Source: Pecten maximus
Lineage: Eukaryota
Direction: 5' to 3'
DNA length: 64,000 nucleotides
NCBI RefSeq assembly: GCF_902652985.1
Contig: NC_047016.1
Span: 20,212,001 to 20,276,000, forward strand
The notes under the pieces were generated by a model, which made no database searches, had not been told where the DNA came from, and worked only from the letters and a program-made list of their open reading frames with translations. Below, piece by piece: positions 17,901 through 38,725 of this stretch. Positions within the stretch are counted from its first letter, which is position 1. Every line of letters begins with the position of its first letter. A program made the position numbers and the translations under genes.

Positions 17901-20900
17901 AGGTACACAACCCTCCAATGTACTGTAATATACCTAACAGGTACACAACCCTCCAATGTACTGCAATATACCACCTAACAGGTACACAACCCTCCAATGT
18001 ACCGTAATATACCTAACAGGTACACCACCATCCAATGTACCGTAATATACACAACAGGTACACCTCCCTCCAGTGTACCGTAATATACCTAACAGGTACA
18101 CCACCCTCCAATGTACTGTAATATACCTAACAGGTACACCTCCCTCCAATGTACCGTAATATACCAAACAGGTACACCTCCCTCCAATGTACCGTAAATA
18201 CCTAACAGGTACACAACCCTCCAATGTACCGTAATATACCTAACAGGTACACCACCATCCAATGTACCGTAATATACCTAACAGGTACACCACCCTCCAA
18301 TGTACCGTAATATACCTACCAGGTACACCTCCCTCCAATGTACCGTAATATACCTAACAGGTACACTTCCCTCAAATGTACCGTAATATACCTAACAAGT
18401 ACACCACCCTCCAATGTACTGTAAATATACCTAACAAGACACAACTTCTATTCATTAAATCATGTATAATTGATCAGTAATGGAATTATCCACTATCAAC
18501 ACATTGAGTCATTAAAAAATAATGGAATGATTCATTATCCACACATTGACTCATTAAAAATAATGGACTGACCCATTATTAATGCAATGAGTCATTAAAA
18601 AGTAATGGAATGACCCAGTAACACAGTATCAACAGATATCTAGAATCTTTAACAATATATTGTCTGCGATGTGTGTTTTTATTAACATAGATATGGTACC
18701 TTTTAGTCATTAGCAATTAAGCCCACTTTTACCAGGATCATCAGGTATCACCAACATAATAACAACCACCACATGTACATCTCACAAGGCTGCAGTTGTC
18801 ACGGAATATATGTTCATATAAACATGATAATTCTAAGGATGGGAGTCTTAACATAGATCAACAGGACATGTCCAGTCTGATTCATAATGAAAGCTAGAGA
18901 GCTCTGGGATCCAATCTGATTGGCACCCTCTTGTTTTTATGTAAAGGAAACCTAATGTATATATATTTCTTTCAATTCACTATTTGTCATTGTAAATGAC
19001 CGAAAAAAATAATAATAAAAAAACAACTTAGAACTCTTTTTTTGTTAATATAGATACAGTAGAGTACTGGAACACTGACTACCTTAACTCAAACTAGAAA
19101 TCATCACTAGTCATTTAATTAGGACAATATATCTAACAGTGAACCACAATACAGAGCTAGGTTCCTTCTGACACCAATAAGGTATATATGTCAGGTATCC
19201 TAAGTAAGTCGTGGGGAGGAGTGATAGAAGTGGAACAAGAATTCCCCACAGACATGAAACAATGTGCTAACTGTTCTAAGACATTGTTATACATATACTG
19301 ATGGCTGTATCACATGAGACTTGGTGTGGAATCGGCTAGGTCATGGTAATATCTGTGGAGGGATGCTCCACTTTGTGGGAGCCTCACAAACATATACATA
19401 TATATATCATAAGGTCTATACCTTTATACAAAGGAAATGTATCACTGTGTGGGATTGTAACATGTACACTTATTTTAGCATGTTCTGTTCTGTATAAGGG
19501 ATGCCCCACTGTTTGGAACAGGATTCTTATTTCTTCCTAATTATGTTTTTCCAAATAAAAGGTGTTAATGATTGTTTTCTGGATTCTAACAACAGTATAT
19601 AGTTAGGCTTATCAATAATTAAATATGTTCAGTAACTACAGGAGCCAACAGTGAAAAAGTGAACAAAAATATACCAAGATCTCATTGAAATATGTGACAA
19701 TTTCTCTTAATATTCACATTGTTAAATATTTACATTGTTAAATATTTACATTCAGTGCTGCAGTCTATGCCAGTATGGATAAATCAAAAGCAGCGAGGAT
19801 TCTGAGTGAGAACAATTGCATTATTGAGGATTCTGAGTGAGAACAATTGCATTATTGAGACTTCATTTTAGTACTATGTTGATCTTTGTAGTACTATGTT
19901 GATCTTTGTAGTACTATGTTGATCTTTGTAGTACTATGTTGATCTTTGTAGTACTATGTTGATCTTTGTCACAGCAAGGCTTTGTACCAAGTGTCAGATA
20001 GGTTGCAAATCAATCACAGAAATGGTTTGATTTAAAGATACCATCTTTCAAATGAACATACTGGAAATGAGTAGAAATGGTGCATGTGTGTATTTAGTAT
20101 GGTCGAAACAAGGAATGTAATTATTAAAGAAAGACAGAGTTTAATGTAAATATAACAATCAAACACTTGCAGGATTGTATTTATTATCAATGTTTGATGC
20201 AATCTGGGTGACAGATGAATATTCATGGAGCCCTAACAGTGACAATGAGTACAATCTAACAAGCCTTTAATTGTTGAATGTTCATATTTTTGTTTTTGTG
20301 TGAATACACGATATACTTGAATACACTATATACTTGAATACACTATATACTTACAGGCTGCTGAGCTTTATCACCAAAGAACGCTTTATCTAACACAAGG
20401 GTTATGTCAAAGAACACTTCCTGAACATCTCTGTCACCATATAGCTGAAATGTATATGAAATGTATACTTCTGTGCATGATCAGTTCTTCATCATCAAAA
20501 AGTTACTAATTCAGATACAAATAAATGAAAATGTGCCTATATCAAGAACAAATTAGAAACCAAAGGAAAAAATAACTATTTGTACAATAATGAACAAAAT
20601 ACAGAAAGCCGTAATAATAAACATATTTAGGGCCACTTGTATGATATATATAGAATATGTAGATACAATATTAATGTAGCATCATTTTTATGACAAATAA
20701 GGAATTGTATTAGGCTGCAACATTATGCCATAACAATATTTTGATTTTTTTATAATACATGGTATTGATAGGATGATATTATAAAGTGTTCACATGGACT
20801 TACTACAACAAGCTTGCCATCGTCATCATAGTGTTTTAAAACGGGTAGTGTATTATTACGGAAGAAGCTAATTCTACTGGAGATTGCGTTGAGATTGTCA

Positions 20901-23900
20901 TCAATCCTTTCCTTCTCCTTCCCTCGATCTACAAGTCGTTTTTGCATGTAATATTCCTCACAGTCTATCAACAGCACAAAATTCATCCCTCCAATCTATA
21001 ACAGAGGAAAATAAAACTTTTGTAACAAAATGGGGACATAAATGTAATCGGTTTTTAACATATTAAATTTAAGCAAACTTCTGGACATGAGGGGAATAGT
21101 ACCAATGTGTTGGATTTTTAAAAACCAACAAACAAAAAACTATGAAAGTATATTGAAACAAGATTGATATGAAGGTAAGTTGTAAAAATCTGGTCACAAT
21201 AGTAATGTCGAGAACACAAACACTTACATATTTGTTAAACTCCTCCACCTGTTCCTTTTCCCTTGGGAAACCCTCCAGGAAGATGGCTGATGCGTCCTTG
21301 TGTTTTGCTAAATGACTTTTAAGTAGATCTACTGTCACCTCCTGCAAATAAAAGATGTTTTAGAATAAAATATTTCAAACTGAATGATCACTTTCATTTA
21401 GGACTTCAATGTTTGAATAACATTTCTAAATACACTAATCATATTGTTAGTGAGTTGTCTCCCTTACCTCAGGTGCCATCTCTCCTTGCTGTACTAACGA
21501 GCTTATCATTCCCCACTTCTGATCGGCTGATCCTTTTTGACTGATCTCTGACCTAATGATGTCACCCATAGATATATGAACTGTGCCTGGGTAGCGATCA
21601 GTGATCATCTTAGCCTGGGTACCTTTCCCACTGCCTGGTCCACCTGTTATAATAACAATTGGTCAAACGAACAAAACACGGAGACAAGCAATAACATGCA
21701 ACACAACAAAAGTTCAACAATAGAAAAAAAACAGCAGAAAACATCCAACAATAACGAAACACGAGAACAATCAAACACTCCGGACAATCACTGAGAAACG
21801 AGACAACGAGCAACGCAGACAAACCAGACAAACAGCGCGAATAAGAGTACGAAACACATACAGAGACAAACGCAGACAGCAACGAAAAGCAGAACAAGAA
21901 ACACGCGAGACAGCAGACGAACACGCGCGAACACAAGAAACAGGCGGAACACATGAGCGAAACAGGCCGAGACACACCATAGCAAACACGCGATAACAGC
22001 AAGTCGAAACACCGCGATAACAGCAGACGAAACAGCGCAACAGCAGACGAAACAGCGCGAGACACAAGCGAAACAGCGCGAGACACAGAGCGAAACAGCG
22101 CGAGACAGCAGAGCGAAACAGCCGAGACAACAGCAGAGCGAAACAGGCCGAGACAAACACAGCGAAACAGGCGCACCAACAGCAGAGCGAAACAGCGCAG
22201 ACAACAGCAAGCAAACAGCCAGACGAAACACCACGAGCGAAACACGCGCGAGACAGCAGAGCGAAACACGCGCGAGACACAGAGCGAAACACGCGCGAGT
22301 ACAACAGCAGAGCGAAACAGCGCAGACAACACCAGAGCGAAACAGCGCAACAACCAGAGCGAAACAGCGCGAGACAAGCAAGCGAAACAGGCGCGAACAC
22401 AGAGCGAAACACGCGAGACAACACAGACGAAACAGCTCGAACAGCAGAGCGAAACAGCGCAGACACAAGACGAAAACACGCAGCGAACAAACAGCAAAAG
22501 CGAAACACGCGCGAACAACAGCAGAGCGAAACAGCGCGAAGAACAAGCAGAGACGAAAACAGCGCGAGAACACACCAGAGCGAAACACGCGCGGAGACAA
22601 ACAGCAGAGCGAAACACGCGCAGACAACACCAGAGCGAAACACGCGAGACAACACCAAGCGAAACAGGCGCTGAGACAACAGAGCGAAACAGCGCGAGAA
22701 CACAGACGAAACAGCGCAACAGAGACAACACACGAAGAGCGAAACACGCGCGAGACAACACCAGAGCGAAACACTGCGCAGACAACACAGAGCGAAACAG
22801 CGCGAGACAACCAAGCAAACACGCGAAAAACAGCGCAGCGAGACAACACCAGAGCGAAACACGCGCGAGACAAACAAACACAGAGCGGACAAACAGCGCG
22901 AGACAACACAGAGCGAAACACGCGCGAGACAACAATCGAAAGCGCGAAACAACGGCGCAGAGAAAACAGACAGAGCGAAACACAAGCCGAACAACACCAA
23001 CGAAACACGCGCATACACGAGCAATTAAACATCTCAACAACACAAGCGAAACACTCCGTAGAAACACAACACAATCAAACACTACGCTATACAACAGCAA
23101 CGAAACCCAACACAATCAAACCCTGAACACCAAGCAAACACGGCGAGACAACACCAAGCGAAACACGCGCGAACAAAGCAAAACCATAGCGACAAACACG
23201 CGCGAGACAACACCAGAGCGAAACACAGCCAGACAACACCAACGACAAACACGCGCAGACAACAGCAGAGCGAAACACGACGCAACACAGATCAGCGAAA
23301 CAGCGTCGAGACACACAGAGCGAAAACACCGCAGACAACACCAGAGCGAAACACGCGCAGACAACACAGAGCGAAACACGCGCAACAACACCAGATCGAA
23401 ACACCGCAGACAACAGATGCAAACACCGCGAGACAACAGCAGAGCGAAACAGCGCGAGACAACACCAGAGCGAAACAGCCGAACACACAGAGCGAAACAC
23501 GCGAACAACACCAGAGCGAAACACGCGCGAGACAACACCAGAGCAAACACGCCGAGACAAACACCAGAGCGAAACACGCGCGAGACAACACCAGAGCGAA
23601 ACAGCCGAGACACACAGAGCGAAAACAACACGCAGAAACAACAGAAGCGAAACACGCGCGAGAACACCAGAGCGAAACACGCGCGAGACAACACCAGAGC
23701 GAAACACGCGCGAGACAACACCAGAGCGAAACACGCGCGAGACAACACAGAGCGAAACAGGCCAGACGAACACAGAGCGAAACACGCGCGAGACAACACC
23801 AGAGCGAAACCACCGACGCGAGAACAAACAGCAGACGGAAACACGCGCGAGACAACACCAGAGCGAAACACGCGCGAGACAACACCAGAGCGAAACACGC

Positions 23901-26900
23901 GCGAGACAACACCAGAGCAAAAGCGCAGACAACACCAAGCGAAACACGCGCGAGACAACACAGAGCGAAAACACGCGCGAGACAACAACAGAGCGAAACA
24001 CGCGAGACAACACCAGAGCAAAACGCAGCAACACAAGCGAAACACTGCGAGACAACACATAGCAAACAGCGTCGAGACAACACCAGAGCAAACACCTCTA
24101 TACAAACCAACAAACATCTCTATACATCATATCTAAACACTCTCTATACAACACCATATCTAAACACTCTCTATACAACATCATATCTAAACACTCTCTA
24201 TACAACACCATATCTAAACACTCTCTATACAACATCATATCTAAACACTCTCTATACAACATCATATCTAAACATTCTCTATACAACATCATATCTAAAC
24301 ACTCTCTATACAACACCATATCTAAACACTCTCTATACATCATATCTAAACACTCTCTATACAACACCATATCTAAACACTCTCTATACAACACCATATC
24401 TAAACACTCTCTATACAACATCATATCTAAACACTCTCTATACAACATCATATCTAAACATTCTCTATACATCATATCTAAACACTCTCTATACAACATC
24501 ATATCTAAACACGCTCTATACAACACCATATCTAAACATTCTCTATACAACACATATCTAAACATTCTCTATACAACACCATATCTAAACACTCTCTATA
24601 CAACATCATATCTAAACATTCTCTATACGACACCATATCTAAACATTCTCTATACAACACCATATCTAAATATTCTCTATACAACATCATATCTAAACAC
24701 TCTCTATACAACATCATATCTAAATACTATTGTTGGACACCATATCTAAACACTCTCGATCTATACAACATCATATCTAAACACTCTCTATACAACACCA
24801 TATCTAAATACTATTGTTGGACACCATATCTAAACACTATCTATACAACACCATAGTTAATAGTTTAATTAACACTCTCTATACATCTTATATAACAGCA
24901 ACACAAATGAACACATTGATCATTACAACATCCTTACCGGCAATGACTATGATTGGACATGTTGGTAGATCGGGCTTCCGTCCTTCATCTTTATTCACGA
25001 CTACTGGAGCATCTTGGACAAGTACCATGCTATTCTGGAGCTCCGACTTAGTTCGCTTAATAGCTTCAGCTGGACGCTCATATGAAGCTGCTTCTGGAAT
25101 AACGTCTTCTGGGGGATTTGGAATATTAGACCTTGGTGGCTCTGTAAAGAAAGTAAACGTAAATAATGAACCATCTTATACATCCTCAGGCAATGGAGAC
25201 TAAGGAATGATGATTTTGTTAATGACAGTGGTAAGAAACAGCCGGTGCATGTAAAAAGTAGTGAAACAAAATCAGAGTGAAATGAGAATTGTTTTTTATA
25301 AAGTACCCGATTTTATTATTACCATAAATCATAGCTACTGTCTACCTACTGTAAGATAAATATAAAGTTATGGTACATATAAGCAGTCTGCAGTATTGTA
25401 ACTGTATAAACAAGAGGCCCATGGGCCTAAACGGTCACCTGAATTTGAAATATTTCTCTAAACTTGACCCTGCCCACCAGCCCCTGGGGGCCAATAATTG
25501 CATACCAGCAAACTGCCTTCCAAAACTGCTAATTCCAATAGAAATGACACAAATGATGTGATTTCCTTATGTAAGCAACAGTAAAGAGTACCTCCTCCAA
25601 AGGAGCAAACAATTAAGAGACCCCAGGGCCAAGAAAATTCACAATTTTTGGTAAAGCACCTTAAGATCCTTCAACCTATGAAAGGGTCTTGAGAAGAAGA
25701 TTTCTGAATTTTCAGCTAATCTGACCATTTTTGGCCCCACCCATCTGCCCCTGGGGGTCAGTCAGGGCCAACATGTACATACCATCAAACTGTCATCCCA
25801 TGCTGATAATGTTAACCAAGTTAGTTTACCTCCTCCCCAGGGGCAAACATGAGACGCCAGGTTCATGAAATTCACAATTTTGGTAAGGCACCTTAAGACC
25901 TTTCTATCTGTGAAGAGTATTTGATTCTACCATATCTAGAAGTTAAAAAGAAGATTTTTGAAGTTTCAGTCAATATGAACATTTTTGGCCCCACCCTCAG
26001 GCCTCTTGGGGTTGGGGATCATATCATTCACAATTTTGGTTGACATTTTACCATGGAAGCTTCCTGCCAAATTTCATTAAATTTGGTTGAGCGGCTTTGG
26101 AGAAGAAGTCGAAAATGTAAATTGCTTACAATGGACGATGCACGATAGACGACTTCGTCTCAGGTGACCTAATAAATCCTAAATTAATATACACTCTCAC
26201 TGATGAAGTACAGAAATACAAATTTAAACTGTTAACACTATTTAGGTGCGGTATAAAAATATCATATTTTCTCCATATAAGGCTTTTTCCTATGCGACAA
26301 CCACTACTAAAAGGTATTACAATTCAGTGATACTGGGAGAATTCATAATCCTGTAACACATTTATACTGTATAATCTCTACTTTCAATTTGATGTAAGCC
26401 TGTTTGTCATTTTGAGGTCCTATAGACTTTGCCTGTTGCCTTGGAATCCTAAATGTACTACATAATAGCTACATACTAAGATATTCTAAATGAAAATGTC
26501 CACATACTATAAACTGTGACCAAGATATTACTGACATACTGCTAGAGAAATTAAGGCTATATACCGGGTAGATGGGCAAGTATTACAATAAAGGTGAGTA
26601 ATATAGACACAACTTTTAAAATAACATATAAACTCTGCAAGAAGTGGAAAGTATGATCAATCTATAGCCCCTACATATACCTACTCAAATTTAATGGATC
26701 AATCTCTCAAATAAAACTTCACACTTTTCTACACACCTCTAATTTGTGTCCATTTAAACTTGATATCTTCCACAGGCTTCAGATAGCTTCTGTCCAATTT
26801 GAACGCTTCTTTTAAATTTAAAGCTTCTAGCGAGTAGGCCGAGGACTTACATAGACAAACATCACAGAGTAGAAATAAAAGCAATACCAACAAAATGTGA

Positions 26901-35900: not shown

Positions 35901-38725
35901 CATGACTTGTAACTTTGAAATGTAAGAGTACTTTCTTTTAATTTTTACTATAATGCATTAATATTATGAAAATCAAACAATTTTTAATATTCAATTGACC
36001 AGAAATTTATGAGATTGTGCAAAAAACATAAAGGATATTCAGCAAATTTCTTTCTTTTGTTTCATTAGACCAATTTCTTTGATAAAAGCATTAATAATTA
36101 TCACTTTAATATATTTCAATAAACAACTTCAGCAAAATTATGAAGTGACTTTGAAAGTTCATTCTGGTAGATATCATTACTAATAGCTACTCAAGACAGA
36201 CTGATCTAAGCCCTCCAGAGAATTTTGTGTTTCAAAAAGAGTTATTTAACCCAAAATTAACCATTATGATCAACTGAATATACATGATGTCATTTATAAG
36301 CGCACATTATATATATATATATAGAGGATATCTAACAGTGTCCTCAGTAATACCAAATATATTTCACGAGTGGGGCTAATTTATATTTGGATATTTTTCA
36401 CGAGTGCGCAGCACGAGTGAAAAATATCAAAATATTAGCCACACGAGTGAAATATATTTGGTATTACTGAAGACACTGTTAGATATTCTGTTTATTACAT
36501 TTTTTATCAGCGAAAACCCTACCCCGTATGCTAACTAGGCCTACAGTGATAATTTGTAAACAAAAAAAGTAGTTTCCCCTGTCCAGGTGCTGACATATAT
36601 GTCGGGCTTTCTGATTGGTCAATTATTTTGGTATTTTCTAATCATTAATTTGATTGGTCAAATCAACAAAAGTGATATTTTTCACTAGTGAAAAATATCA
36701 CTTTTATAGAATGAATAATTTTTGATATTTCACTGGTAAAAATGTTATAAATATATATATGTTGCACTCTGTGCAAGAAAGGAAATCAATATCCAATTTT
36801 TGGTTAATATGANNNNNNNNNNNNNNNNNNNNNNNNNNNNNNNNNNNNNNNNNNNNNNNNNNNNNNNNNNNNNNNNNNNNNNNNNNNNNNNNNNNNNNNN
36901 NNNNNNNNNNNNNNNNNNNNNNNNNNNNNNNNNNNNNNNNNNNNNNNNNNNNNNNNNNNNNNNNNNNNNNNNNNNNNNNNNNNNNNNNNNNNNNNNNNNN
37001 NNCACGTATACTACCTGATCTAGCTAAAACAAACAGTAGTATACTTAATCAATTTTGTTATTTCCAGTACAATATTATGTTCAATATAAAACAACATAAT
37101 CTTTTGAAATTTAAAAATTAGTACATCTGACACATTATTTGAAAATTAAACGTAGATCATGATCTTTAAGCTCAATATCACACTTAACGTACTCTGTGCC
37201 TTGTTTTTCTTAGAAGATATATATAACAACTTTCATACTGACTAATTGTCTTTCTGAATAAATGACATTGAAACATTAATAATCCATCAATCACACTGAG
37301 TTTTTCACATTTTCATCTGATAGAAGCTTAATTTACTTATGTGGTTCGATCTTTATGCTAATATATCCATAAATATGCAGCAATGTCATTTACAATCTTA
37401 TCTATTTAAATACTCTTTAATAAAGAAACAATTTTAATGACTTAAGAATACAATGTACTCAAATCAACAATAATCTGACATTGATTAATTGAATTTTGGT
37501 CAAACAGTGTCCTAGATATTATAAATCTAGTACATCTGCAGTTGTGACACCACAAAATATTATACACGAGTGACTTGTTAAATAAGTACATTGGAACAGA
37601 CGTTTTGTGTATACGACACACAGGTCAGTGAGACAGTTACAAAGATGTAACACCACACAGGTAGATTTCCTCATCCAACTATACCTGTTCCATCATCCAA
37701 CCAAAAGTACTCTCGACCTGTTTATATGATTACATGAAATCTTTAAATTACTGTAATCATTTATATATAAAACATAATTTACAATTTGAAACAACTTCAG
37801 TATGGTAATGAGAAATAGTACTTGTTTTTAAAAAGCATACAATAGATGAACTTGAATGAAAAATACCTATTTTTGATGGATCCTTTTGTCTAGATGATGG
37901 CCTGGATCGCCTTGTCTTGCCTTGTGGAGGGGTGATAGGGGGCAGTGGTGTCTTAGTTCGCCGTATGTCCACAAAGGCACTCCAAGTGATGTTGTCGGAC
38001 CCCTTATCCTCTACCTTCTGTAGACAATCTATCAGGTATTTAATGTGGTTTGTCGGTCTATGGTACATCAAACCAGTCATCAAAGACTACAAATCAAAAA
38101 GTAAAAAGCATGATTTAATGAACTAGTCTGACAAATAGAAGTCATACAAAATGGGCCATGCCTTCAGTATAAATATATACTTATTCATAGAAAAATATCA
38201 TACTGATGGGTCGAGTGACAGAACAATTTTACTGAATATATAATGATGTTGAGAATATACAGTACAGAGAATGTATGCAGTCAAAAACGCCGGTTGTTAA
38301 TGCTGTGCTCCTTATATTGTCAATTTATAAGTCTTTTGATATCTTAGGATAAGTCATGCCGAAGGTGTTTATCATCATTGTTATACAACACCCAAAGGTC
38401 ACATTAGAGCTTTTATAAATGAGATTAAATCGTAATCTGCTCACAAGTGTAAAGCAGTATCATTTTGATAAACCAACAGCTATTTGTACAATTTTGCAGA
38501 ATATGTATTATTTTCATGGAAAGCGGAATACTAGAATCAAAGTTAAATGTTAATCTGAAGACAACTGTCACTAAATGATCGCCATGTCAAGCATGGACAT
38601 CTCGCTCCATGGAGTCAAAAGAAAACAACAATTTGTCAACAAAAAACGAGGTTTTGAAAACTCACCTCAAAAAGTCGAGGGATATTCCTTGCCGACAGAT
38701 ATGACTTCGCATCATCCGTAGTCAT
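8787..38725 (-). CDS. AK5: Adenylate kinase 5-like gene, 14 coding exons, ~629 aa: join(38666-38725, 37867-38086, 33869-33973, 30759-30934, 29691-29804, 29182-29373, 28269-28362, 24938-25141, 21468-21643, 21228-21341, 20804-20995, 20355-20444, 16471-16492, 8787-8917)
   Basis: Manual splicing gives GT-AG introns with compatible phases, 1890 nt in total. N-terminus MTTDDAKSYLSARNIPRLFESLMTGLMYHRP closely resembles vertebrate AK5 (MNTNDAKEYLARREIPQLFESLL). Two P-loops (GGPGSGK), two G[YF]PR motifs and two LID segments are present. Confidence 0.9.
11080..12750. repeat. 34-bp minisatellite (ACATATGAACCATTGGGCTACATGTGTCTCATTA) grading into a 32-bp variant (ACATATAAACCCTGGCTACAAGTGTCCCTTTA)
   Basis: Tandem copies; switch near 12130-12280. 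Confidence 0.96.
13245..15880. repeat. 61-bp G-rich minisatellite
   Basis: GAGGGAGTGTTCTGTTCCTGACTAGGGAGACACTCTGTAGTGGGTGGGGGAGACAGACCCT, ~40 copies. Confidence 0.97.
16471..16492 (-). CDS. AK5: AK5-like 22-nt micro-exon 13 (APSSEGA)
   Basis: tttgcag acceptor and G|gtaagt donor; bridges phase 0 (exon 12) to phase 1 (terminal exon). Confidence 0.65.
17485..18440. repeat. 38/41-bp minisatellite GTACCGTAATATACCTAACAGGTACACAACCCTCCAAT
   Basis: Tandem copies. Confidence 0.96.
19868..19968. repeat. 20-bp unit x5 (TAGTACTATGTTGATCTTTG)
   Basis: Perfect tandem copies. Confidence 0.95.
20355..20444 (-). CDS. AK5: AK5-like exon 12 (LYGDRDVQEVFFDITLVLDKAFFGDKAQQP)
   Basis: Matches vertebrate AK5 DADRDEDEVFYDI; tttcag / gtaagt. 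Confidence 0.9.
20804..20995 (-). CDS. AK5: AK5-like exon 11 (LID, RLVDRGKEKERIDDN)
   Basis: R-x-DDN LID motif; 192 nt. Confidence 0.93.
21228..21341 (-). CDS. AK5: AK5-like exon 10 (EVTVDLLK...IFLEGFPREKEQVEEFNKY)
   Basis: GFPR signature; 114 nt. Confidence 0.93.
21468..21643 (-). CDS. AK5: AK5-like exon 9 (AK domain 2 P-loop, GGPGSGKGTQ...GEMAPE)
   Basis: Canonical P-loop; 176 nt, same size as exon 4. Confidence 0.93.
21660..24096. repeat. T-depleted, noisy 27-bp repeat GAGACAACACCAGAGCGAAACACGCGC (T->G image of the adjacent array)
   Basis: Letter-for-letter T->G correspondence with the 24097-24890 unit. Confidence 0.9.
24097..24890. repeat. 27-bp G-free minisatellite TATACAACACCATATCTAAACACTCTC
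   Basis: Tandem copies with CATC/CACC and CACT/CATT variants. Confidence 0.97.
24938..25141 (-). CDS. AK5: AK5-like exon 8 (interdomain linker, ...RKPDLPTCPIIVIA)
   Basis: Open phase 1-1 exon, tttacag / gtaagg; ends with the pre-P-loop strand. Confidence 0.85.
25408..26172. mobile_element. Non-autonomous Helentron/HINE-like element
   Basis: Starts AAACAAG with palindrome AGGCCCATGGGCCT; sub-terminal inverted repeat GGTCACCTGA (25433-25442) / TCAGGTGACC (26160-26169); internal diverged repeats. Confidence 0.65.
28269..28362 (-). CDS. AK5: AK5-like exon 7 (INADRDIKEIAFELGQCF...)
   Basis: C-terminal AK helix motif (D/N)ADR; tttacag / gtaagt. Confidence 0.88.
29182..29373 (-). CDS. AK5: AK5-like exon 6 (LID region, RLLKRGQKEGRVHDN)
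   Basis: AK LID motif; 192 nt; aag acceptor, gtaatt donor. Confidence 0.9.
29691..29804 (-). CDS. AK5: AK5-like exon 5 (DITGDLILSSLKCHPKAEGFILEGYPRTVNQIKQFEKI)
   Basis: AK signature FILEGYPR; 114 nt. Confidence 0.93.
29888..30715. mobile_element. Second decayed HINE-like element
   Basis: AAACAA start with palindrome GTATTGCTAAAGCAATAC; internal diverged GTGACCTTGA-containing repeats; end approximate. Confidence 0.4.
30759..30934 (-). CDS. AK5: AK5-like exon 4 (AK domain 1 P-loop, GGPGSGKLTQ...GEMAPE)
   Basis: P-loop and the HLSMGDLLR motif; 176 nt; GT-AG boundaries. Confidence 0.93.
31035..33570. repeat. ~26-bp minisatellite AAACCAAGGGTAACAGATAGGGCTTG / ...GATGGGACATC, with a 570-bp higher-order duplication
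   Basis: Two unit subtypes; identical ORF translations offset by 570 bp (32055/32625, 32012/32582). Confidence 0.94.
33869..33973 (-). CDS. AK5: AK5-like exon 3 (linker, ...SPLPPITKSVDADVPDVPITLIV)
   Basis: caacag acceptor, G|gtaggt donor, phase 1-1; ends with the beta strand preceding the P-loop. Confidence 0.85.
36320..36750. mobile_element. MITE-like element with a long terminal hairpin, in (TA)n context
   Basis: ~170-bp near-perfect inverted repeat 36322-36490 centred on CACGAGTGCGCAGCACGAGTG; second palindrome GTGATATTTTTCACTAGTGAAAAATATCAC. Confidence 0.6.
36813..37002. other. Assembly gap (190 N) in AK5-like intron 2
   Basis: Run of N. Confidence 1.
37867..38086 (-). CDS. AK5: AK5-like exon 2 (SLMTGLMYHRPTNHIKYLIDCLQKV...KDPSKI)
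   Basis: ttgtag acceptor, G|gtattt donor; docking-domain motif P-x-x-H/P-I-x-YL. Confidence 0.88.
38666..38725 (-). CDS. AK5: AK5-like exon 1 (MTTDDAKSYLSARNIPRLFE)
   Basis: ATG at 38725-38723, donor GAG|gtgag, phase 0; start of the Dpy-30/RIIa-type dimerisation/docking motif. Confidence 0.9.

What the first reader, a model, noticed from the sequence alone, without database searches (positions are those of the whole stretch)
21660..24096. 2.4-kb block that is a T->G transliteration of the neighbouring 27-bp minisatellite
Seen: the adjacent array unit TATACAACACCATATCTAAACACTCTC uses only A/C/T. This block's unit GAGACAACACCAGAGCGAAACACGCGC uses only A/C/G and is the same string with every T replaced by G (A->C on the AK5 sense strand). 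The minor variants also map: CATCATATC->CAGCAGAGC and AACATTCTC->AACAGGCGC. The block is rich in small deletions, has mixed patches where Ts reappear (21660-21800, 23010-23130), and switches abruptly near 24096. It creates a false CpG island and all the 270-500 aa ORFs at 21.6-24.1 kb. Inference: I know of no mutational process that converts all Ts to Gs, so the most likely cause is a long-read basecaller mis-assigning one signal class on a three-letter template, left unpolished. If real, it would be an undescribed processive transversion or modified-base phenomenon.
Basis: partly seen in the sequence, partly recalled or inferred. Interest (0 to 1): 0.75.

Follow-up and report, generated by a model that had tools for sequence, protein, structure and literature searches.

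The report
Miscalled repeat block, assembly artefact
A 2.4-kb stretch inside an intron of a scallop adenylate kinase gene is the neighbouring 27-base repeat written with G in place of every T; short-read data do not contain it, so it is a long-read sequencing error left in the reference, not biology.

Summary
Window 21669-24096 is about 101 units of the 27-bp A/C/T minisatellite of 24097-24870, with T written as G. Against the T->G unit it gives 2156 matches, 91 mismatches and score 2807; every other letter map scores 776 or less. Even the array's polymorphic C/T positions reappear as C/G.

The block is not real DNA. Contigs of four public runs from three studies give zero depth in all 14 bins from 21769 to 24106. 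In all four, the contig over the left flank runs on from 21668 straight into T-alphabet units. No indexed run holds half of the words.

The block is indel-rich: 17% against 5% in the T array. T positions are lost 3-4 times more often than A positions.

G000 has the size and scaffold count of the published king scallop assembly, which was built from PacBio Sequel reads, wtdbg2 and Arrow, with no nanopore data. A context-free relabelling of one letter fits a per-nucleotide dye read-out. The suspected cause, a swap of the two brightness classes of one colour, rests on recall.

The false CpG island and the 239-501 aa ORFs are by-products. The scan noted another T-to-G array on another piece of this genome (s1-789202, unchecked). 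Interest is low and limited to assembly quality control.

The parts
21669..24096 (.). False G-alphabet block. It is about 101 units of the 27-bp minisatellite with T written as G and many letters missing (2428 b where about 2725 are expected).
   Evidence: T->G map, per-position profile, 100.9 units. (zero contig depth in 14 of 14 bins in 4 runs; contigs leave the assembly at 21668). (16-20% indels).
24097..24870 (.). The correctly written part of the same minisatellite (A/C/T alphabet, about 29 units). Its first 30 bases or so (24097-24125) still lack several Ts.
   Evidence: period 27, 29.4 copies, 87% matches, 5% indels. (covered by contigs of all 4 runs from bin 24107 on). (reading of 24097-24125).
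21450..21643 (-). Adenylate kinase exon that encodes the P-loop GGPGSGKGTQ. Its splice acceptor lies 25 bases from the start of the array.
   Evidence: Pfam ADK, E 1.8e-10; AAA_17, E 2e-12. (translation). The acceptor was read. The exon's lower end (donor) was not fixed.
24938..25028 (-). End of the upstream coding exon (...PIIVIAG), followed by a GTAAG donor. With the exon above it bounds an intron of about 21644-24937 that the array almost fills.
   Evidence: (ORF 24888-25028) and my reading. There was no Pfam match for this short piece, so the exon call is an inference.

Best explanation
The block is an error of the reference assembly, not a sequence of the animal.

The real intron holds one continuous minisatellite in the A/C/T alphabet. 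It has about 130 units of 27 bp and starts right after window position 21668. In the long-read data used for the draft, about 101 of these units were written with G wherever T stands, and with many T positions dropped.

The miswritten stretch is only about 66% like the true one. Correct long reads and short reads therefore could not be placed on it, neither polishing step repaired it, and it kept near-raw quality.

Shown here: the letter-for-letter T->G relation; the absence of the block from short-read contigs; the true T-alphabet continuation at 21668; the raw-like indel load with a T-specific excess of losses.

Inferred: the platform, from the match of G000's size and scaffold count to the published PacBio Sequel / wtdbg2 / Arrow assembly.

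Inferred from recalled knowledge of that instrument (my odds about 0.55): it tells G from T, and A from C, only by pulse brightness within one colour. A template stretch with no G leaves a single brightness class in that colour. The caller's running brightness model can then slide so that T pulses fall in the dimmer G class and the weakest ones are missed.
For: -: the T->G map scores 2807; the other 8 substitutions and the unchanged unit score 776 or less.
- T positions read G 77.9%, lost 16.7%, T 2.5% (n=647). A positions read A 94.8%, lost 4.5% (n=1021). The polymorphic C/T positions of the true array become C/G/lost.
- 16-20% indels in the block against 5% in the T array.
- the best 5 of 18 listed runs hold 0.37-0.41 of the words of 20600-25600. 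No run holds half. The block makes up 49% of that stretch.
- in runs X1, X2, X4 and X5 (3 studies), depth is 0 in 14 of 14 bins from 21769 to 24106. Flank contigs cover 20600-21668 and 24779-25435.
-, joints: 21668->24560 in X1, X2 and X5, and 21668->24668 in X4, with 30-34 matching letters.
- both 20-mers occur only at this locus in 918 Mb.
- G000 has 918,306,378 b in 3983 pieces, the figures printed for an assembly made from Sequel 1 reads with wtdbg2, Arrow, 10X/freebayes polishing and a second Arrow round that also filled gaps.
- an unchecked note reports a second T-to-G array elsewhere in this genome.
Against: - The runs laid are Logan contigs, which show presence better than absence. The tool itself warns that a hole proves nothing.
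- The raw long reads were not seen. The number of reads in G mode, their strand and the place of the switch are unknown.
- The part 23619-23919 is nearly error-free in the G alphabet (74 of 77 T positions read G). That is cleaner than one raw read should be, so several reads may share the miscall, and I cannot say why polishing then stopped short elsewhere.
- A 1.6-kb G-free array nearby (L023 1450-3025, 1% indels) is not affected. Three-letter make-up alone does not trigger the error.
- The two-brightness scheme of the instrument is recalled. Five paper searches found no printed source.
Confidence: 0.9

Rival explanations
1. The error was made by software after base calling (draft consensus, Arrow gap filling or short-read polishing) and not by the basecaller.
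For: The published pipeline includes a second Arrow round in which reads spanning gaps filled assembly gaps. The left edge of the bad block coincides with the first base of the array, a typical place for a contig break.
Against: None of these programs has a known route that changes one letter into another in every sequence context while leaving A and C alone (my knowledge, not a test). Short-read polishing cannot have brought in G, because no short-read contig holds the G version and there is no other copy in the genome.
Confidence: 0.06
2. The G-alphabet block is a real, diverged half of the array, or a private allele of the sequenced animal.
For: Part of it (23619-23919) is clean and regular. 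The assembly passed two kinds of polishing.
Against: Depth is zero in all 14 bins in 4 runs of 3 studies, including the clean parts where contigs as short as those laid on the T array (80-119 letters) would fit. Contigs continue from 21668 into T-alphabet units without a branch. No mutational process changes every T, including the polymorphic ones, and nothing else.
Confidence: 0.02
3. It is a nanopore-type repeat miscall, a confusion of current levels between k-mers as at telomeres.
For: Phantom repeats of this look are in print only for nanopore data. Deletions outnumber insertions, 256 to 103.
Against: The assembly paper lists PacBio, 10X and Hi-C data only. The Ts sit in many different 5-6-mer contexts and all change alike while A and C stay, which a k-mer signal would not be expected to do (inference).
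Confidence: 0.01
4. The thymines of this array, or the adenines opposite them, carry a modification that makes the SMRT polymerase read them as G, while amplified short-read libraries read T.
For: Only that the long-read and short-read data disagree at exactly one letter.
Against: In SMRT sequencing the call comes from the dye of the incoming nucleotide. A template modification changes timing, not colour, unless it mispairs, and no natural modification is known to pair A with dG or T with dC quantitatively (my knowledge). The right-hand 770 b of the same array read as T.
Confidence: 0.01

Closest known systems
Repeat-calling errors of nanopore basecallers at telomeres (Tan et al. 2022, Genome Biol 23:180; abstract and passages seen)
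   Same: A true tandem repeat is rewritten as a different, regular repeat. For (TTAGGG)n read as (TTAAAA)n this is also a one-letter relabelling. The false repeat sits next to the true one, and other platforms do not show it.
   Different: There the cause is similar current profiles of k-mers, on nanopore reads, and strand-specific. Here the data are SMRT reads by the assembly paper, the swap is free of context, and strand bias could not be tested.
Phantom satellites in nanopore assemblies (bioRxiv 10.64898/2026.07.13.738322; passages seen)
   Same: The diagnosis follows the same logic: a satellite present in the long-read assembly, absent from short reads of the same strain, with the true satellite present instead.
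   Different: That text calls nanopore 'uniquely prone' to such miscalls. This case sits in an assembly made without nanopore reads and concerns a 27-bp minisatellite in an intron, not a simple satellite.
Unpolished low-quality stretches in CLR-era long-read assemblies
   Same: Near-raw indel load (16-20%) where reads could not be mapped back for polishing.
   Different: Ordinary unpolished stretches carry random errors. This one carries a systematic change of one letter.

Membership tests
Basecaller-made phantom repeat (systematic long-read repeat miscall) | The false repeat is absent from short-read data of the same species or individual | tested here: met
   depth 0 in 14 of 14 bins (21769-24106) in 4 of 4 runs from 3 studies; no run holds half of the words. 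Caveat: these are contigs, not raw reads.
Basecaller-made phantom repeat (systematic long-read repeat miscall) | The true repeat is found at that place in independent data | tested here: met
   contigs over 20600-21668 go on into letters that fit the T array (joints 21668->24560 or ->24668, 30-34 letters) in 4 of 4 runs.
Basecaller-made phantom repeat (systematic long-read repeat miscall) | The false repeat is a regular rewriting of the true one and lies beside it | tested here: met
   the T->G map scores 2807 against 776 or less for the others, and polymorphic positions map too. The switch falls within 9 bases, 24088/24097.
Basecaller-made phantom repeat (systematic long-read repeat miscall) | The miscall is already present in raw long reads, typically with strand bias | not testable with these tools
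   Only contigs of older runs were laid. The single read-laying run was used.
Two-brightness-class swap of a two-colour SMRT instrument (recalled scheme) | Swaps occur only within a same-colour pair (T<->G, A<->C) | tested here: inconclusive
   This block is T->G, and the one other note in this genome is also T-to-G (unchecked). That is n=2 with no counter-example. The genome-wide scan could not be run.
Two-brightness-class swap of a two-colour SMRT instrument (recalled scheme) | The relabelled letter also shows excess drop-out, as the dimmest class does | tested here: met
   16.7% of T positions are lost against 4.5% of A positions. The seven non-polymorphic C positions lose 41 letters in about 650 (my sum from the table, about 6%).
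CpG island | GC above 50% and CpG observed/expected above 0.6 over more than 200 b (criteria recalled), in real DNA | tested here: not met
   The numbers pass (GC 0.53, o/e 1.52, 2428 b), but the letters are not in the organism's short-read data.

The most novel reading that the evidence does not exclude
The disagreement between long and short reads reflects a real chemical state of this array: a modified thymine or adenine in native DNA that the SMRT polymerase copies as G (or C), and that amplification erases in short-read libraries. A milder version concerns quality control only. It would be a failure mode of two-brightness SMRT base calling on templates that lack one letter, which I did not find in print, and which plants phantom repeats, false CpG islands and ORFs in CLR-era reference genomes. 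I give that milder version about 0.5.
Probability: 0.01. Interest if true: 0.85.

Novelty: not a real feature. Interest (0 to 1): 0.12.

Why it matters
For the biology of the animal it does not matter. The intron simply holds one long A/C/T minisatellite.

It does matter for users of this reference:
- About 2.4 kb of sequence is wrong.
- The CpG island there is false.
- Seven ORFs of 239-501 aa are false.
- The intron is about 300 b too short.

Annotation, methylation or repeat surveys could pick any of these up.

A second such note in the same genome (unchecked) suggests a recurring error class. In the papers I could search, phantom repeats are described only for nanopore data, and one 2026 preprint calls nanopore uniquely prone to them. 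A PacBio CLR example would be a useful warning for assemblies of that period.

Tried and rejected
- **Genome-wide scan for other T-free or A-free blocks.** I then scanned the window plus 200 kb of neighbouring DNA by composition. This found no further T-free or A-free block. It found two G-free arrays, both clean, which shows the error is sporadic.
- **Printed source for the instrument's colour and brightness scheme.** Five searches, one search for its short name and two reviews read by passages gave nothing. The scheme stays recalled.
- **Printed report of such a miscall on PacBio data.** Searches found only nanopore cases. This is a limited library, so it is no proof that none exists.
- **Depth in the T array as a copy-number test.** Rejected, because the tool sums contigs and warns against this use.
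- **Nanopore origin.** Considered first because deletions outnumber insertions. Rejected.
- **Earlier findings by words**. They gave one parallel note without coordinates, so I could not check it.
Full report
**What is there**

The stretch 21660-24096 is almost free of T: A 45.1%, C 30.0%, G 23.1%, T 1.9%, with 47 Ts. The adjoining 24097-24870 is almost free of G: A 40.2%, C 28.6%, T 29.8%, G 1.4% (sequence read).

Tandem Repeats Finder sees both as period-27 arrays.
- The block has 84.4 copies with 73% matches and 17% indels. Other period rows give 16-20% indels.
- The T array has 29.4 copies with 87% matches and 5% indels.
- The other long arrays of the window have 0-9% indels.

**Is the transliteration more than chance?**

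I took the commonest 27-mer of the T array and aligned the block to tandem copies of it. I did this under 9 letter substitutions and with the unit unchanged.
- T->G gives score 2807: 2156 matches, 91 mismatches, 103 inserted and 256 deleted letters, 82.7% of columns.
- The next best map, T->A, gives 776.
- The unchanged unit gives 567.

The per-position profile shows how each unit letter is read in the block:

| Unit letter | Read as | Lost | n |
|---|---|---|---|
| T | G 77.9%, T 2.5% | 16.7% | 647 |
| A | A 94.8% | 4.5% | 1021 |

The two positions that are polymorphic C/T in the true array behave the same way:

| Position | T array | Block |
|---|---|---|
| 10 | C14 / T14 | C41 / G22 / lost 27 |
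| 23 | C20 / T7 | C54 / G5 / lost 34 |

So variant Ts are rewritten too. The block spans about 100.9 units in 2462 bases, 24.4 per unit instead of 27.

Quality varies along the block.
- It is best at 23619-23919, where 74 of 77 T positions read G.
- It is worst at 21669-21969 and 23019-23169, where G, T and losses are mixed.

The last G is at 24088 and the first T at 24097. The first 30 bases or so after the switch still lack several Ts.

By-products of the block:
- 255 CpG, observed/expected 1.52 against 0.42 for the window.
- ORFs of 501, 428, 417, 334, 333 and 273 aa on the - strand and 239 aa on the + strand.

**Context**

The array nearly fills an intron of an adenylate kinase gene on the - strand.
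- The exon at 21450-21643 translates to GGPGSGKGTQAKMITDRYPG... and matches Pfam ADK (E 1.8e-10) and AAA_17 (E 2e-12).
- The piece at 21072-21347 matches ADK weakly (24.9 bits, cut-off 26.8).
- The upstream exon end near 24938 is my reading and has no Pfam match.

**Is the block real DNA?**

The look-up of sequencing runs on 20600-25600 listed 18 runs. Eight hold part of the stretch. The best five hold 0.37-0.41 of the sampled words, and none holds half. The block is 49% of the stretch and the two flanks are 36%.

I laid Logan contigs of X1, X2 (one sample), X4 and X5, which come from three studies, at 90% likeness.
- All four cover 20600-21668 with one contig each and 0-6 differing letters.
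- All four cover the right flank (24779-25435 in X1 and X2; two pieces, 24854-24972 and 24943-25437, in X4; 24781-24869 and 24856-25437 in X5) and the T array.
- In all four, the 14 bins from 21769 to 24106 have depth 0.
- The bin 21602-21768 has 40% of the flank depth, as expected if cover ends at 21668.
- In all four runs the left-flank contig does not end at 21668. It goes on into letters that fit the T array: joints 21668->24560 in X1, X2 and X5, and 21668->24668 in X4, with 30-34 letters on the shorter side.

So the true sequence after 21668 is in the T alphabet.

Caveats:
- These are contigs, not reads, and the tool warns that a hole proves nothing.
- The clean parts of the block would have taken contigs as short as those laid on the T array.
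- One of the samples may be the one that was assembled.

**Which platform?**

Earlier notes of this scan call the genome king scallop. The paper on that species' assembly (PMC7191990; passages seen) prints 918,306,378 bp in 3,983 scaffolds. These are the figures the genome tool gives for G000.

The paper lists these steps:
- PacBio Sequel 1 reads and wtdbg2 v2.2
- Arrow polishing
- 10X reads with freebayes polishing
- Hi-C scaffolding
- a further Arrow round in which reads spanning gaps filled gaps
- two more freebayes rounds

No nanopore data are listed. So the miscall must stem from SMRT reads or from their handling.

**How it most likely arose**

What is shown here is one letter relabelled in every context, with A and C untouched and extra loss of that same letter. 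A nanopore signal depends on k-mers and would not be expected to do this. A read-out with one dye per nucleotide can.

The following is from my own recall; no paper I could search confirms it.
- The Sequel 1 separates the four nucleotides by two colours and two brightness levels.
- G and T share one colour, with T the brighter. A and C share the other.
- The caller re-estimates the brightness classes as it goes.

On a stretch whose nascent strand has no G, only one class is seen in that colour. If the estimate slides, T pulses land in the dimmer G class and the weakest fall below detection.

That would explain the T->G swap, the intact A and C, and the 3-4-fold excess of losses at T positions. 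The mirror case, A read as C on reads of the other strand, gives the same + strand result. It predicts spurious insertions rather than losses, so I favour the first. I put the specific mechanism at about 0.55, and the general verdict (artefact of the long-read data, left unpolished) at about 0.9.

Polishing would fail because the miswritten stretch is only about 66% like the true one (unchanged unit).

**What does not fit neatly**
- The part 23619-23919 is cleaner than a single raw read should be. Several reads probably shared the G mode there, and I cannot explain why quality falls off to the left.
- A 1.6-kb G-free array 130 kb away (L023 1450-3025, unit of 20 b, 1% indels) is intact, as is a 0.85-kb one (L019 2585-3437). 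The failure is therefore sporadic.

**Known relatives**

Regular miswriting of repeats is in print for nanopore data.
- (TTAGGG)n is read as (TTAAAA)n and (CCCTAA)n as (CCCTGG)n or (CTTCTT)n. The errors are strand-specific and not seen in PacBio HiFi reads (Tan et al. 2022; abstract and passages).
- A phantom AAAC satellite in a nanopore assembly was diagnosed by its absence from short reads. That text states that nanopore is uniquely prone to this (bioRxiv 10.64898/2026.07.13.738322; passages).

My two searches for a PacBio case found none. The library is limited and supplements were closed.

The scan holds one parallel first-reader note in this genome, 'exact T-to-G transliteration across an array' (s1-789202). 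I could not locate or check it.

**Verdict**

The feature is not real. Interest is low, apart from a warning for users of this and similar assemblies.

Noticed in passing
window 1-64000: The window is crowded with minisatellites. TRF gives 62 rows, which I read as roughly 20 separate arrays with periods of 12-61 b, several of them 1-4 kb long.
   Followed up: no
window 25276-25600: Summed contig depth is 5,700-105,000 against 15-40 in the flanks in all four runs, with many loose ends at 25408-25446 and 25557. I read this as the edge of a very high-copy dispersed repeat.
   Followed up: no
L023 1450-3025 (G000:C2:20337450-20339025): A 1.6-kb G-free array of a 20-b unit, 78 copies, 1% indels. 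It is an intact three-letter array that serves as a control.
   Followed up: partly
window 24097-24125: Just right of the switch the T-alphabet units lack several Ts. The wrong stretch therefore reaches a little past 24096.
   Followed up: partly
window 36813-37002: The only run of N in the window, 190 letters.
   Followed up: no
window 20600-21668: Run X5 differs from the assembly at 6 letters and 2 small insertions in the left flank. X1, X2 and X4 differ at 0-1 letters. This looks like ordinary polymorphism between animals.
   Followed up: no
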